A DNA stretch of 64,000 bases. It comes from Octopus sinensis. Taxonomy: Eukaryota. The DNA lies in the NCBI RefSeq assembly GCF_006345805.1, contig NC_043012.1, positions 48,546,001 to 48,610,000 of the forward strand. The letters run 5' to 3'. Under the pieces are notes generated by a model that made no database searches, was not told the DNA's origin, and worked only from the letters and a program-made list of their open reading frames with translations. Each line of letters opens with the position of its first letter. The first letter of the stretch is position 1. The position numbers were made by a program, and so were the translations under genes. Positions 55,941-60,718 of this stretch are shown one piece after another.

Positions 55941-56504
55941 TATTTATATTTCTAACACACGCACACACGCACATAGATGTATAGAGAGATAAAGCCATAT
56001 ACATATACACATTTATATGTTTATACTTATACATTCATAGATACGAACACGCACATATTCATACACACATAAATCCATGCAACATATACATATTCATACA
56101 CATATACAAACGCACGTACACACAAGCGTACATAGCTGCGAAAAGCAAGAGAAAATTTTTTAAATGATGTCCCTTTATTGGTTTCAGTCAGTTGACTGCC
56201 GCCATGCTGGAGCAAGTTGAACAAATCAACCCCAGAACTTATTCTATGTAAGCCAGCACTTATTTTATCGGTCTCCTGTGCCAAACCGTTAAGTTACGGG
56301 GATATAAACTCACCAACATCGGTTGTCAAGCAGTGGTAGGGGTACAAACACAGATACACACACACACATATATACATATACGACGGGCTTCATTCAGTTT
56401 CTCTCTACCAAATCCACTTACAAGACTTTAGTCGGCCTGAGGCTATAGTAGAAGACACTTGCCCAAGGTGCCATTGGGAACCATGTGGTTGGTAAGCAAG
56501 CTAC

Positions 56505-58650
56505 TTTATTTCAAAAATGTTGTCATAAAGGCATGATGCAGAGTAGCTTGCAGGCTAGACAAAGACATTGATGAGGTGAATGATGATAAGGATGATATTA
56601 ATGGGAAAAGACAAAAAACGCCCGCCGATTTTTTGCTTCTCTAAAACATATTTCTCTTCTTTTTTTTCACAGAAAAAGACAAAACGAGGCAATGAACCTC
56701 TTCAGTTTTACAAATTTTTGGACGAATAGTCCATTTAAAAATTGGGGCGTTAAGCCTCTTAAACATAATAACATACAATAACACTGAGGCTTTTCAACCT
56801 CTTGTCATTATTCCTCACCGTCATCACTTGTGTCCGTATACCCCACCATCCCCCACGCCTCATTCAAGACCAAGATAGGATCCGAGCCGGCGTCGCCCGG
56901 TCCCAAGCGATAATCCTCGTTGAGTTCCTGCAGCCTGAACCTCCACAGACATCGTTATGATCGCGAAAGCTATCTGCGGAGGCCATTCGGGATCCTGTGT
57001 GAAGGTTAAAGGTACACTCTTATGGTGCTTTTTCACCACCTTTTCCACATCTCCGCCTCTGTAGAAGAGGAACAATAGTTCCCCTGTCTCTAGGTTCGAG
57101 GTAGTCAATTTTACCGTTGGCGGCACAGTTGCCCCTAACGGTGTCCCTTCCCCTGTCGGTGGTACAACCCCTATCGGCAAGGTTCCTGGACATTTCAGTG
57201 CTATGTCACCGACTGCCGGCAATGTCCCGTTTCTCTTTCTTTTCCTCTTTTTTTCCCACTCAACTGAGGGAGGTTGCGTCTCCTCCGTGACCGGGATATT
57301 TACCTCCCTTCCTTCATCCCCAGGATCCTTCTTTGTCTTGCGGCCCTTCCCTGAGGAGTCCTCCGTTTCCTCAGCCGCCTTCGTTCCCTCTTTTACAGAG
57401 GTCTCAAATGACAGCTCCAGGATTCCGCCTTGCTCCAGAGAACAGTTTTTCTTTATATGGCCAGGCTCCAGGCACCGATGACCCCTGGGGTGGGGGCGGC
57501 CCTCAAGAATCACCGGGTACCTGCACCCGGCCATTTTCAAAAAATCTGGCATAACCAGATTCATGGCTGATTGGGTCCACAGGGTCAAAACAGCTTTTGA
57601 CCCAACCCAATCAGCCACAGGAAGAATTTTCACATTGAGGAGCCTGTCTCCGCTGCCACCCAAACCCCGACGGATAGCATCCTCTAACCACTGGGGTTGA
57701 ATTCCGGGTGGCAAACCACAGATCCAGGCCCTCGTCAATTTTGTCCCACAATAAGTGGGAAGAAACAAAATTTCTTTACCCTCAACGGGCTGGCTCGCAA
57801 AACTGCGAGCCCCCTCTGGGTTGTCAAACAGCAACTACACCGTTGCATGTTTGACTCCCCTAGAGATATATTTAATGGTTGGTAGATGTTCTGCCAACTT
57901 CTGCTCAATCATCTGCTCGGAGAAGACGGCAATGGTGTCGAGAACCTTCGAATACGTCCTCAACACCATCGTACTCTCCTCTTGCTGTCTGAGCCACTCC
58001 TTAGGTGGGAAAATCTCCCACTCTACAATCTTATCCGTATTTCTTTGCCATGTCCAAATCAATAGTTCACAAGAAAGAAAAGAGAGAATTCAAAAGAAAA
58101 CAAAAGAGAAGAAGAAAAAAAAACAAACAGTTCAATACAAATTCACAATAGAAGAAGAAAACAATTGTTCAAAAAAGAAAAACACAGCAAAAAAATCTTC
58201 TGGACATTCACTTCGAACCTGGAATGCTCCACTTGAATACAGCTTTCCAACGTAGTTGTAAAATACACTCTATTTACAAACACCGAACGACTTTTGGTGG
58301 CAGGATACGTCACCAAACTATACTTCTCAGCATGAGAAAAAATTTTCCCTTCATGTGAACACTTGAAATACAGCTTTCCAATAAATGGTAAATGTTGTAA
58401 AAACATACACTATTAAAAAATTTTCACTTAATGTGAACAATATTGCTGAACCGCAAGCAGACCAACATCCTAAATCCAGTGAGGTCTCCTTGTTTGTAAA
58501 AATTATAACCACAGACAACAACCCCTACTGGACCAACGTCTTACCTTGCAGCAGCTTCTTTTGGCAGGCTAAAAACACTGCCGGCTATCTTCTTCAGTGC
58601 ATAACACAATGACACATGCGTACAACGACAACAGAAACTCATGGGAAATA
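56505..58650 (-). mobile_element. 2146-bp ORF1-only Tx1/L1-like non-LTR retroelement with perfect 14-bp TSD
   Basis: TSD GGTAAGCAAGCTAC at 56491-56504 and 58651-58664; ~590-bp 5'UTR, single ORF1, 3'UTR ending AAATAAA. Confidence 0.88.
56860..58062 (-). pseudogene. ORF1 (nucleic-acid-binding, zinc knuckle) of the element, about 400 aa, interrupted by one TAG at 57835-57837
   Basis: AWICGLPPGIQPQWLEDAI, GCRYPVILEGRP and HRCLEPGHIKKNC (degenerate CX2CX4HX4C) are typical of Tx1/L1 ORF1p. ORFs 57835-58062 and 56860-57834 are contiguous and in frame. Confidence 0.8.
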
Positions 58651-60718
58651 GGTAAGCAAGCTACATACCACACAGCCACTCCTGCGCTATTCTCATGTTT
58701 GGACATTCAAAGTAAAACATTAAGACATCAGCAACACACCAAGCTGAGTATTCTATTAATAAAAAAAATAACACTTGTTGGTAGGGTGTGTCTGTTAAAA
58801 TAATTTGATGTAAATTAATATGATGTTCTTATAAGCAACTCGTGTAATAGAAACAACAATTAGCTATGTCCTTCTATGTTCTGAGTGCAAAACTCACTGA
58901 GGTGCAGTGCACCATCTACAGATTTATTCGTGACGATAAAACAAGTACCAGCTCCGTAATGGTGTCAAATAAATTAACTACGTTTATATCAGAAAAGGTG
59001 TAGCATTTGCAATTCCACTTTTGATCTGGATTAACTCATTAAATGTTGACTAGGCAATTATTAGTTTCCTCGGATGCTACTGTTTATGGCATAAAATTTC
59101 ATATTATGCCGAAAGTCATAACATGAAACCTTAGATTAGCCATGAACGAACTGACCTATGATGAACGGTGTTCCATTTCTAGCCCTAAAGCATTTCTTTT
59201 TCAGAAATAGGGCAAACCACTGCTTAACCTTGCAAGAGCTGTTCTATAATCGCAGGTGTTACAATTGCAATCAACACGTATTTTCTTTCCGGAAATAGTG
59301 TAACTTCAGATCAGACTTGTCATGCGGTAGTTGTTCTATGATCAAAGACGTCTCATTCTTGATACAGCCTACATTTTCTTAGCAAAAATGATTTATCAAG
59401 TATGACATTCAACGCTTCTTTCCTTATTTAAGACACTATTATAGGATTTGAACGACATTTCCTTGCTATTTCTTGTAGATAAAGCGTCCTTAAAAAGGAT
59501 TCATCGCTGACTGCGGGCATGTTTCATATACTTTAAAGGTGCCGAGTGAGTGGAACTAGTAGAGTACCACACAAACTACTATTAAGTGTTAAGTTGCTTT
59601 TATCGTGTGAGTTTAATTTCTAGAAGGCTCTACTTATTCTTTCCTTCCTAAAGATGTCGATAAAATACATACTATCGATTTACTGAGGCTGATTTACTCT
59701 GTTATACATTTCAGATAAATATTTCAGAAATGAATATTTTAGACACAGCTAATCGAAATCAAAGTGTTGTCCAAAGCTTCGATGAATCTTAACTGGTCAC
59801 CTGTGTTTTTTTGCGTTTGTTTTAATGTTTATTCATTGAAAGAAGCACAATGGCCATGATATGTTTTCGGAGTTTCGTAACCGAATTGTAAGGTCGTTTT
59901 TCTTAAATCGGAAACTTATCCTGACTGCTTGTAACAGTATGGACTCCGTTAAAGGTGGCCCAAAAAACGAGGTGATACTGTTAAACCGGACAACGTTCGA
60001 CGTCGACCTCTCAAGAATTCTGAACACAAACCAAAGAAAAAATAGCACAAGACTTCATGTCCAATGTTCTAACGATTCTATAATTACTCTAACATCGTCT
60101 GTTATTTACTTTTATCAACCCAGAAAAGATAAAAGGTAAATGTGTCTCTAACGGGATTTGAACACACACACACACACACATTAGTATACATACGACAGGT
60201 TTCTCTCACGCGCGTTTATTTCTATTTATATTAAGGGAATTGAAAGAAAGTGAAACAACATATGATAAGCACACTGTTTGTTCCATCAACTGACAGTACT
60301 TACGTGTTAGCTATTCTATTAATCTCGAATGAATAAAAGCGAGCCATTCTCTACGGTACTGAAGAAGAAATAATGAAAAATTGTGCTGAGTGAATACTTT
60401 TGGTTAACAGCATCATAGATCTTGCATTCAAAACCCAATATAAATGCTTCGTTCTGTATTGTATTTAGATCTAGTTAACGAATGTAACCTGTTACGTCTC
60501 CCAGTCGTTGGTCTACGGGTTTTAGAAGGGTTTTAGTAGAACTACTCGACCCCAGCATTTATTATTTTTAAAGCTTGATATTTGTTCCATCGGTTTCTTA
60601 TGCGAAACCGCTAAGTTACGGGGACTTATAAAATATCCTGACTGCTTTTTAAGAATTTGTGAGGGGAAAACCCCCAAAACAGACAGACACACACACAAAC
60701 ACAAACACACATGTATGA

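What the first reader, a model, noticed from the sequence alone, without database searches (positions are those of the whole stretch)
56491..58687. Sequence-specific retroelement that inserts into the tRNA-like head of the dominant SINE
Seen: a 2146-bp element lies inside SINE-A with a perfect 14-bp duplication (gtagcttgcttacc, element sense). The SINE head is upstream and the SINE body downstream. A second, diverged element (33495-34177) interrupts another SINE-A at the same position, so two of roughly a dozen SINE-A copies in 64 kb are hit at one site. The site lies between the A-box-like (tggctgtgtggt) and B-box-like (ggttcagtcc) motifs, so insertion separates the Pol III promoter halves. 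Known: Tx1-clade LINEs include target-specific families (U2 snRNA, 5S rRNA, tRNA arrays, microsatellites, other transposons). Inference: this family targets a SINE, a parasite of a parasite that uses a harmless high-copy landing site. I do not know of a description in cephalopods.
Basis: partly seen in the sequence, partly recalled or inferred. Interest (0 to 1): 0.92.

Follow-up and report, generated by a model that had tools for sequence, protein, structure and literature searches.

The report
Retroelement that targets an octopus SINE
A 2.1-kb mobile element in an octopus genome keeps only the RNA-binding gene of a LINE and, in all four copies I could examine, sits at one exact position inside a common short repeat (a SINE); this is a real example of site-specific retrotransposition, a known strategy, with a new kind of target.

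Summary
A 2146-bp insert (56505-58650, minus strand) is flanked by an exact 14-bp duplication, and joining the flanks rebuilds one ordinary SINE-A copy. A second insert (33495-34177) is a 683-bp, 5'-truncated relative, with a decayed copy of the same 14-bp duplication at the same SINE position. The inserts are 64-75% alike, but their host SINEs are ordinary copies (92-95% to consensus), so they were independent insertions. Two more copies in Octopus sinensis each have a SINE head ending at the same "CC" directly upstream; both have lost their 3' ends. The element has no reverse transcriptase or endonuclease. Its one ORF has two RRM-like domains and a degenerate zinc knuckle, and it evolved under purifying selection (dN/dS 0.2-0.4). 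Distant homologues are ORF1s of full-length octopus LINEs (apurinic-type endonuclease, RT, zf-RVT). The one whose flanks I read lies in an (ATT)n microsatellite. The best reading is an ORF1-only, non-autonomous LINE derivative, copied in trans by target-primed reverse transcription at one site in the SINE head. Tx1 membership is untested, the autonomous partner was not found, and no genome-wide survey was possible. It is a new member of a known kind, of moderate interest.

The parts
58665..58691 (-). SINE-A head, consensus positions 1-27, including the A-box-like TGGCTGTGTGGT (58667-58678)
   Evidence: SINE positions 5-41 align to 58687-58651 at 97%; alignment with other copies
58651..58664 (-). 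Upstream copy of the 14-bp target-site duplication (GTAGCTTGCTTACC in element sense), SINE positions 28-41
   Evidence: Exact match to 56491-56504
58052..58650 (-). 5' UTR of the element. The first 27 nt (58624-58650) have no counterpart in the O. sinensis copies. The UTR contains a 25-bp direct repeat and a purine-rich low-complexity tract.
   Evidence: Alignment with L001; 5' ends of L001 and L010 read directly; internal repeat; TRF
56860..58051 (-). ORF1 remnant: two RRM-like domains, a degenerate CCHC-like knuckle (H-x-C-x4-H-x4-C) and a C-terminal region. The conserved ATG at 58051 is 1 nt out of frame with the long reading frame.
   Evidence: Translation; frameshift; homologues; structure model and Foldseek; dN/dS 0.2-0.4
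57835..57837 (-). In-frame TAG at a conserved Trp codon (TGG in P0001)
56505..56859 (-). 3' UTR. It ends in AATAAA (56505-56510), the only such hexamer in the element, with no poly(A) tail.
56542..56551 (-). 3'-UTR motif GCAAGCTACT, the reverse complement of the SINE site A|GTAGCTTGC. It can form a 10-bp stem with the 3' junction.
56491..56504 (-). Downstream copy of the 14-bp target-site duplication
56331..56490 (-). SINE-A body downstream of the site, with a 15-bp deletion over the B-box-like motif, followed by a microsatellite. The distal half of the SINE continues to about 56150.
33461..33494 (+). Head of the second occupied SINE-A, with a 6-7-nt internal deletion. Its last 13 nt (33482-33494, gtagttgctcacc) are the decayed upstream duplication.
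33495..34177 (+). Second element: a 683-bp, 5'-truncated copy of a diverged subfamily. It holds an ORF1 C-terminal remnant (33627-33983), a 3' UTR ending GAATAAAA, and the motif GCAGCTACTTA at 34135-34145.
34178..34191 (+). Decayed downstream duplication (atagcttgcatacc)
34192..34330 (+). SINE-A body of the second occupied copy, 94.7% identical to the window consensus

Best explanation
The element belongs to a family of ORF1-only, non-autonomous non-LTR retrotransposons. A full copy is about 2.1 kb: a roughly 600-nt 5' UTR, an ORF1 of about 400 codons, and a 200-350-nt 3' UTR ending in AATAAA.

Inferred steps:
1. It descends from an L1/Tx1-group LINE that lost ORF2.
2. It is copied in trans by a related autonomous LINE, whose apurinic-type endonuclease nicks one site in the head of an octopus SINE.
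3. The bottom strand is nicked at 5'-GCAAGCTAC^TTACC-3', give or take 2 nt because of the flanking A's. The freed 3' OH primes reverse transcription at the 3' end of the RNA.
4. The top strand is cut 14 nt away, after ...GCTTACC. This gives the 14-bp duplication and, when copying is incomplete, a 5'-truncated insert.
5. The only AATAAA is the last six bases, so transcripts should run into the flanking SINE before polyadenylation. That read-through tail (GUAGCUUGCUUACC...) is complementary to the nicked primer and would fix the junction, as shown for R2Ol and R1Bm.
6. Insertion splits the A-box-like and B-box-like halves of the SINE, so the occupied copy is probably dead as a source gene.

Shown: the anatomy, the junctions, independent insertions, homology to LINE ORF1, and selection on ORF1.
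Inferred: trans-mobilisation, nick positions, endonuclease specificity, read-through priming.
For: Junctions:
- An exact 14-bp duplication flanks the insert, and the empty site rebuilds as a SINE.
- A second, 5'-truncated copy has the same duplicated 14 nt.
- Two O. sinensis copies (L001, L010) have a SINE head ending at the same 'CC' directly upstream. The head in L010 is a different SINE subtype.
- Orientation is the same in 4 of 4 copies.

Independence: the inserts are 64-75% identical. Their SINE bodies are 92-95% identical to consensus and 89.5% to each other, like unoccupied copies at 94-95%.

Retroelement nature:
- There is 5' truncation, no LTRs were seen, and the two ends share only a 6-nt inverted match.
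- The ORF belongs to a mostly cephalopod protein family. In L002 and L009 its members lie directly upstream of an ORF2 that starts M..L.GCLNV(R/K)GL.
- In L002 that ORF2 carries Exo_endo_phos, RVT_1 and zf-RVT. Its best solved relative is human L1 ORF2p.
- The L002 LINE lies between (ATT)n tracts, which suggests it is target-specific.
- The ORF1 model (pLDDT 78) matches tandem-RRM proteins.

Long-lived lineage:
- dN/dS is 0.2-0.4 with dS 0.7-1.0 among three lineages.
- ORF1 runs straight into a 3' UTR in both window subfamilies, and L010 matches the first ~50 nt of that UTR before its break.

Read-through priming: AATAAA occurs only at the very end. Precedent: PMC6530143, which cites PMC1074724.
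Against: - No RT or endonuclease is present in any copy, and no autonomous partner with the same 3' end or target was found. Trans-mobilisation and endonuclease specificity are therefore inferences.
- Only four copies were available.
- L001 and L010 lack the 3' UTR and any SINE body downstream. Both were reached through annotated proteins, which may select atypical copies.
- The 56k copy is itself defective, with a frameshift after the ATG and a TAG.
- ORF1 similarity to the full-length LINEs is distant (17-30% identity), so the clade of the partner is not established.
Confidence: 0.72

Rival explanations
1. Composite unit: one ancestral SINE acquired an insert, and the SINE+insert composite was then amplified as a unit. 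On this view the shared position reflects common descent rather than targeting.
For: All copies share the same head/insert boundary.
Against: - The inserts are 64-75% identical, yet the flanking SINE bodies are as close to consensus (92-95%) as unoccupied copies.
- The 33k copy is 5'-truncated by about 1.3 kb but keeps both junctions and the duplication.
- The head in L010 belongs to a different SINE subtype.
- 5' ends differ: the 56k copy has 27 extra nt.
Confidence: 0.03
2. The head is part of the element in some copies. Transcripts started in or upstream of the SINE head, as in the 5' extensions of some target-specific Tx1 families, so L001 and L010 carry a transduced head and need not sit in a SINE at all.
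For: - L001 and L010 have a head but no SINE body within the loci fetched.
- Both heads end ...GCTTCC, without the A of the consensus.
- Kojima 2015 describes Tx1 families with target-derived 5' heads (PMC4494074).
Against: - Both copies have lost their own 3' UTR (homology stops at L001 ~6975 and L010 ~15675). The missing body is therefore explained by later deletion or rearrangement.
- The two window copies have head, duplication and body, with no tandem heads.
- The two heads are of different SINE subtypes.
Confidence: 0.1
3. Specificity comes mainly from RNA-DNA pairing rather than from the endonuclease. A fairly unspecific nick is used productively only where the read-through tail, or the 3'-UTR motif GCAAGCUACU, pairs with the SINE site.
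For: - A 10-nt motif in the 3' UTR is the exact reverse complement of the site across the junction. Only 4 of 2000 shuffles reach this.
- The 33k copy keeps 8 nt at the homologous place (74 of 2000 shuffles, with the target restored).
- AATAAA at the very end forces read-through.
- Annealing of read-through RNA raises efficiency in R2Ol (PMC6530143).
Against:
- The hairpin z-score is modest (-2.15) in 56k and absent in the decayed 33k copy.
- The constant 14-bp stagger points to two defined cuts.
- Known apurinic-type site-specific LINEs (R1, Tx1L) owe their specificity largely to the endonuclease (PMC4494074 introduction).
Confidence: 0.12
4. It is not a retroelement: a cut-and-paste DNA transposon that targets small-RNA-like sequences, of the Dada type.
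For: Dada transposons insert inside tRNA and snRNA genes (PMC3706591 and PMC8869645 abstracts).
Against: - No transposase is present.
- The only inverted match between the ends is 6 nt, and it is absent from the O. sinensis 5' ends.
- One copy is 5'-truncated with an intact 3' end.
- The ORF is homologous to LINE ORF1s that lie next to endonuclease/RT ORF2s.
- From my own knowledge, a 14-bp duplication is unlike the 6-7 bp of Dada.
Confidence: 0.02

Closest known systems
Tx1-clade LINEs that target other transposons (Tx1L into the piggyBac-type Tx1D in Xenopus; Tx1-Mar into Mariner-N4_AMi in crocodilians; PMC4494074)
   Same: Insertion at a defined position and orientation inside another mobile element. 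Relatives here carry an apurinic-type endonuclease plus RT. A related family is microsatellite-specific, as Kibi and Koshi are.
   Different: The target is a SINE, a retroposon, and I found no such target in the literature searched. The element itself has no ORF2. Tx1 membership could not be tested.
HAL1 (half-L1), the ORF1-only non-autonomous derivatives of mammalian L1 (PMC5753468, which cites Bao & Jurka 2010, PMC2923044)
   Same: 5' UTR, ORF1 and 3' UTR without ORF2, presumably copied in trans. ORF1 here was kept under purifying selection (dN/dS 0.2-0.4).
   Different: From my own knowledge, HAL1 is mammalian, derives from L1 proper, has the coiled-coil/RRM/CTD type of ORF1 and shows no site specificity. 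This family has tandem RRM-like domains plus a knuckle and a fixed target.
Non-LTR elements inside tRNA genes (NeSL-1_TV in tRNA-Pro, LIN15_SM in tRNA-Arg, LIN25_SM in tRNA-Glu; PMC4640811) and Dada DNA transposons
   Same: Insertion inside a Pol III-type small-RNA-like sequence that is present in many copies.
   Different: Those elements use a restriction-like endonuclease or a transposase and hit real genes. Here the target is a SINE head that tRNA models do not recognise.
R1/R2-type rDNA-specific LINEs
   Same: Precise junctions, a constant target-site change, and a likely role for read-through target sequence at the RNA 3' end (PMC6530143; PMC1074724).
   Different: They are autonomous, insert in rDNA and belong to other clades. 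R2 uses a restriction-like endonuclease.

Membership tests
Non-LTR retrotransposon inserted by target-primed reverse transcription | Target-site duplication flanking the insert | tested here: met
   Exact 14 bp at 56k. A decayed copy of the same 14 bp at 33k.
Non-LTR retrotransposon inserted by target-primed reverse transcription | 5'-truncated copies with a constant 3' end | tested here: met
   The 33k copy holds only the last 683 bp and ends GAATAAAA, against GAAATAAA at 56k.
Non-LTR retrotransposon inserted by target-primed reverse transcription | No LTRs, no terminal inverted repeats, no transposase | tested here: met
   Sequence read directly; ORF list; no Pfam hit other than noise.
Autonomous LINE | Encodes a reverse transcriptase and an endonuclease | tested here: not met
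   No RT or endonuclease ORF or remnant in 56505-58650 or at 33495-34177. In L001 and L010 the element homology ends without one. ORF1 is followed directly by the 3' UTR.
LINE ORF1 protein of the RRM + CCHC type | RRM fold(s) followed by a CCHC knuckle; the gene lies upstream of an ORF2 with endonuclease and RT | tested here: met
   AF2 model (pLDDT 78) matches tandem-RRM proteins at E~1e-5. Homologues P0003 and P0004 sit directly upstream of ORF2. Five of the ten homologues scanned hit a CCHC knuckle model (zf-CCHC, zf-CCHC_4 or zf-CCHC_5). In this family the first Cys is lost (H-x-C-x4-H-x4-C) and Pfam gives no hit.
Tx1 clade | RT domain groups with Tx1 in an RT phylogeny (RTclass1 / Repbase references) | not testable with these tools
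   The element has no RT, and no Repbase/Dfam references were available. The distant relative in L002 has Exo_endo_phos + RVT_1 + zf-RVT, with a weak best PDB hit to L1 ORF2p (E=0.004). This places it in the L1/Tx1 group only. Source names were uninformative.
Tx1 clade | Target-sequence preference | tested here: met
   4 of 4 copies at one SINE position. The related full-length LINE in L002 is flanked by (ATT)n on both sides. This feature is not exclusive to Tx1.
HAL1-like ORF1-only derivative | ORF1 retained, ORF2 absent, and propagated as such | tested here: met
   Both window subfamilies show ORF1 followed directly by a 3' UTR, and L010 matches the start of that UTR before its break. dN/dS 0.2-0.4.
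HAL1-like ORF1-only derivative | Derived from mammalian L1 proper | tested here: not met
   The host is a cephalopod, the ORF1 type differs (tandem RRM + knuckle), and homologues are mostly cephalopod.
tRNA-derived SINE (the target) | Head recognisable as a tRNA | tested here: not met
   ARAGORN found none. Rfam gave no tRNA match even at E<=10. Only A-box-like and B-box-like motifs are present.

The most novel reading that the evidence does not exclude
The element encodes part of its own address in RNA. A short 3'-UTR motif (GCAAGCUACU, about 40 nt from the end) has the same sequence as the nicked DNA primer. It pairs with the target-derived read-through tail to form a stem that closes over the 3' end. 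At a new SINE, the DNA primer would displace this mimic strand. Site choice and the exact start of reverse transcription would then be set by base pairing as much as by the partner's endonuclease. If so, an ORF1-only passenger could retarget a borrowed RT through changes in its own UTR.
Probability: 0.12. Interest if true: 0.75.

Novelty: new member of a known kind. Interest (0 to 1): 0.5.

Why it matters
Site-specific non-LTR retrotransposons are studied for two reasons. They show how a mobile element can persist without harming its host, and they are models for programmable insertion of DNA. The full-text searches I ran found no LINE-type element described as targeting a SINE. A SINE is an abundant, dispersed, mostly neutral landing site, unlike the clustered rDNA, snRNA or microsatellite targets known so far.

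The family is also a double dependant. It lands in a SINE and must borrow its RT and endonuclease, yet it kept its own ORF1 under selection over long divergence (dS near 1). That makes it a natural case for asking what ORF1 proteins contribute in cis.

In practice, each insertion splits the SINE's presumed Pol III promoter. These elements may therefore be a minor brake on SINE source genes in octopus genomes, which from my own knowledge are unusually SINE-rich.

The finding does not overturn anything. It extends a known strategy to a new target and a new architecture.

Tried and rejected
- Two protein word-index searches, with the ORF and with a four-sequence family alignment, returned only P0001. 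No further annotated copies could be reached this way.
- An exact look-up of the window's 324-aa ORF found nothing on record.
- A 20-mer from the element's 3' end was scanned in the metagenome collection. The five stretches found (L012-L016) were all unrelated chance matches.
- A junction pattern and a SINE-head 28-mer were scanned in the bacterial/archaeal and viral collections and found nothing. These collections seem to hold no octopus DNA, so the negatives say nothing.
- Four further octopus loci (L002, L011, L017, L018; about 74 kb) held no more copies of the family.
- A structure prediction from a 3-sequence alignment was useless (pLDDT 32). It was repeated with 34 sequences.
- Source names of ORF2 homologues gave no clade label.
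- The idea that the ORF's C-terminus hides the start of an endonuclease domain was dropped. Pfam gives no hit, and the resemblance was only by eye.
- A shared in-frame stop in the 56k and L010 copies was considered as a possible programmed stop and rejected. One is TAG and the other TGA, at a Trp codon.
- Aligning the 3' ends with those of the full-length LINEs in L002 and L011 showed no convincing homology.

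
Full report
**1. The observation**

The window is AT-rich, microsatellite-rich animal DNA. The only database relatives of the element's protein are from octopods.

The 14-mer GGTAAGCAAGCTAC occurs on the + strand at 56491-56504 and 58651-58664, which leaves a 2146-bp insert at 56505-58650. 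An exact 14-bp repeat within 3 kb is not rare in 64 kb: about 0.7 are expected on a uniform model (my arithmetic). The context is what matters. Joining the two flanks with one copy of the 14-mer gives a sequence colinear with the other SINE-A copies of the window.

In the SINE consensus I built from those copies, the duplicated bases are positions 28-41. They lie between TGGCTGTGTGGT (14-25) and GGTTCAGTCC. Element and SINE have the same orientation, on the minus strand.

**2. The second insert**

BLASTN does not connect 33495-34177 with the first insert. TBLASTN does (29% identity over 110 residues, E=1e-4). The last 130 nt of the two 3' UTRs are 75% identical.

This copy is 683 bp long and corresponds to the 3' third of the long element. 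It is flanked by gtagttgctcacc (33482-33494) and atagcttgcatacc (34178-34191). That is a decayed duplication of the same 14 nt, with the SINE head upstream and the body downstream. A 5'-truncated copy that keeps the 3' end and both junctions is the classic footprint of target-primed reverse transcription.

**3. Independent insertions, not a composite**

The SINE bodies next to the two inserts are 92.4% and 94.7% identical to the window consensus and 89.5% identical to each other. Unoccupied copies score 94-95%. The inserts themselves are only 64% (coding) to 75% (3' end) identical. The inserts therefore come from lineages that split long before either host SINE was made.

In the window, 2 of 11 SINE-A-type heads are occupied. 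In about 130 kb of other octopus sequence fetched later, none of about 8 further heads covering the site is occupied, apart from the two copies I went looking for.

**4. What the element encodes**

The minus strand carries one long reading frame (56860-58062). It has an in-frame TAG at 57835-57837. The conserved ATG at 58051 is 1 nt out of frame. This copy is therefore defective but little decayed.

Pfam finds nothing. The only close database relative is O. sinensis LOC115225585 (P0001, 59% identity). A full HMMER search of 1.8 billion representative proteins found 59 relatives. Those I traced are mostly from octopods (O. bimaculoides, O. sinensis, O. vulgaris, Argonauta) or from unnamed Logan sequencing-run assemblies. 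Three clusters come from metagenomes, and one of these is an annotated bacterial protein. Several relatives carry a CCHC knuckle.

With a 34-sequence alignment, AlphaFold gives a confident model for residues 10-200 (mean pLDDT 78). Its best PDB matches are tandem-RRM proteins: SFPQ/NONO and hnRNP A1 UP1 (E~1e-5). In this family the first cysteine of the knuckle is replaced (H-x-C-x4-H-x4-C).

**5. The protein family is LINE ORF1**

In O. sinensis locus L002, the homologue P0003 is followed within about 40 nt by an ORF that starts MANLRIGCLNVRGL. That ORF carries Exo_endo_phos, RVT_1 and zf-RVT. Its best solved relative is human L1 ORF2p, but only weakly (E=0.004). In the Logan contig L009, the homologue P0004 is followed by MSICLGCLNVKGL.

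The L002 LINE is flanked on both sides by (ATT)n, so it appears to be target-specific. This rests on a single copy. P0003 is also the closest relative of our ORF outside its own family.

The element is therefore a LINE derivative from a group with an apurinic-type endonuclease, and that group probably includes another target-specific member. This is compatible with the Tx1 clade, whose members are known for target preference, including for other transposons (PMC4494074; PMC4640811). It does not demonstrate Tx1 membership. The element has no RT, and I had no reference set for a tree.

**6. ORF1-only architecture**

No copy has any trace of ORF2. ORF1 runs into a 355-nt (56k) or 194-nt (33k) 3' UTR. 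The two UTRs align over most of the shorter one, at 70% identity over aligned bases. A third copy, L010, matches the start of this UTR before it is broken. The loss of ORF2 therefore predates the split of the subfamilies.

Between the three long copies (56k, L001, L010), ORF1 shows dS 0.7-1.0 and dN/dS 0.2-0.4. The lineages evolved for a long time with a functional ORF1. The nearest known analogue in architecture is mammalian HAL1 (PMC5753468).

**7. More copies from another genome**

- L001 (O. sinensis CM016886.1) has a SINE-A head at 5450-5489 ending ...GTAGCTTGCTTCC. The element's 5' UTR follows directly.
- L010 (CM016865.1) has a head of a different SINE subtype (...GGTAAGAAGTTTGCTTCC) at 13702-13740, followed directly by the element.

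In both, the element begins at nearly the same base (tgtgcatgcg / actgcgcatg). The 56k copy has 27 extra nt in front. All four 5' junctions therefore fall after the same 'CC' (SINE positions 40-41).

Both O. sinensis copies have lost their 3' part. Homology stops at L001 ~6975 and L010 ~15675, and simple repeats follow (within about 90 nt in L010). No SINE body follows. These two support only the 5' junction. A minority reading is that they carry a transduced head, as some Tx1 families do (PMC4494074).

**8. Mechanism**

The constant 14-bp duplication implies two defined cuts. One is on the bottom strand at GCAAGCTAC^TTACC, where the position is uncertain by up to 2 nt because of the A's. The other is on the top strand after GCTTACC. 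This is inferred from the junctions.

The only AATAAA in the element is its last six bases, and there is no poly(A) tail. Polyadenylation must therefore fall in the flanking SINE. The RNA would then end with a copy of the target that is complementary to the nicked primer. Such read-through pairing raises efficiency and precision in R2Ol and R1Bm (PMC6530143, which cites PMC1074724).

About 40 nt from the end, the 56k 3' UTR contains GCAAGCTACT. This is the exact reverse complement of the site across the junction. It forms a 10-bp stem with the junction in a read-through RNA (-15.4 kcal/mol, z=-2.15). Only 4 of 2000 shuffles of the UTR give as long a match. The 33k copy keeps GCAGCTACTTA at the homologous place (8 nt against the restored target, 74 of 2000 shuffles). 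The (ATT)n-specific LINE has no analogue. This was noticed after the fact and rests on two related copies, so I treat it as a lead.

**9. What could not be done**

- No octopus assembly could be searched by DNA.
- The metagenome, prokaryote and viral collections hold no octopus SINE.
- Real tRNA genes could not be scanned.
- The SINE head is not recognised as a tRNA by ARAGORN or Rfam.
- The autonomous partner remains unknown.

**10. Verdict**

It needs correcting on three points: the element is a non-autonomous ORF1-only derivative, Tx1 membership is open, and 'tRNA-like' and 'dominant' are too strong. It is a new member of a known kind, a target-specific non-LTR retroelement that lands in another transposon, with a new target class and an unusual architecture. 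Interest is moderate.

Noticed in passing
window 56542-56551 and 34135-34145: The 3' UTR of both window copies holds a short sequence that is the reverse complement of the SINE target across the insertion point (GCAAGCTACT; GCAGCTACTTA). It can form a stem with the 3' junction in a read-through transcript. Shuffles reaching the match: 4 of 2000 for 56k, 74 of 2000 for 33k with the target restored.
   Followed up: partly
window 56505-56510: The element's only AATAAA is its last six bases and no poly(A) tail follows. The 33k copy ends the same way (GAATAAAA), and the full-length LINEs in L002 and L011 have AATAAA at or within a few bases of the end.
   Followed up: partly
window 57835-57837; L010 about 14651: The same Trp codon of ORF1 is a stop in two copies. 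The mutations differ (TAG versus TGA), so this is coincidence, not a programmed stop.
   Followed up: yes
L002 4779-10345 (O. sinensis CM016872.1): A full-length LINE (ORF1 plus a frameshifted ORF2 with Exo_endo_phos, RVT_1 and zf-RVT) lies between (ATT)n tracts on both sides. It looks like a microsatellite-specific family.
   Followed up: partly
L011 1722-15026 (O. vulgaris OX597840.1): Three head-to-tail copies of a full-length LINE with a period of about 5283 bp. Each 3' end (…AAATAAAATAAAA) appears to abut the next copy's 5' UTR. This suggests a tandem array or self-targeting.
   Followed up: no
window 41319-42937, minus strand: Fragment of an unrelated LINE: an RVT_1 hit with a NYRPISCLP-type motif, plus an upstream ORF with no Pfam hit. 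It has no DNA similarity to the element studied.
   Followed up: partly
window 33100-33445 and at least 10 other places (e.g. 14212-14331, 44110-44246, 53161-53295): A second SINE family, unrelated to SINE-A, is about as frequent in the window. One copy lies immediately upstream of the occupied SINE-A at 33k.
   Followed up: partly
After the internal (TATG/TG)n microsatellite comes a conserved distal part of about 170 bp, 79% identical between the two occupied copies.
   Followed up: partly
window 6535-6605, 20425-20538, 61036-61143; L010 13702-13740: A SINE-A variant has GGTAAGAAGTTTGCTTCCC in place of GGTAAGTAGCTTGCTTACC at the target. The L010 copy of the element sits in a head of this type, so the site tolerates some variation.
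   Followed up: partly
proteins P0073-P0077: Proteins 67-79% identical to the octopus LINE ORF2 are filed under JGI/ENA metagenomes, and one under a 'Herbaspirillum sp.' MAG. This is probably cephalopod DNA in microbial data sets.
   Followed up: no
window 24053-24152: A run of 100 N, which is an assembly gap.
   Followed up: no
window 46394-48037: A long low-complexity tract of homopolymer-like trinucleotide repeats. It produces spurious ORFs of 260-314 aa.
   Followed up: no
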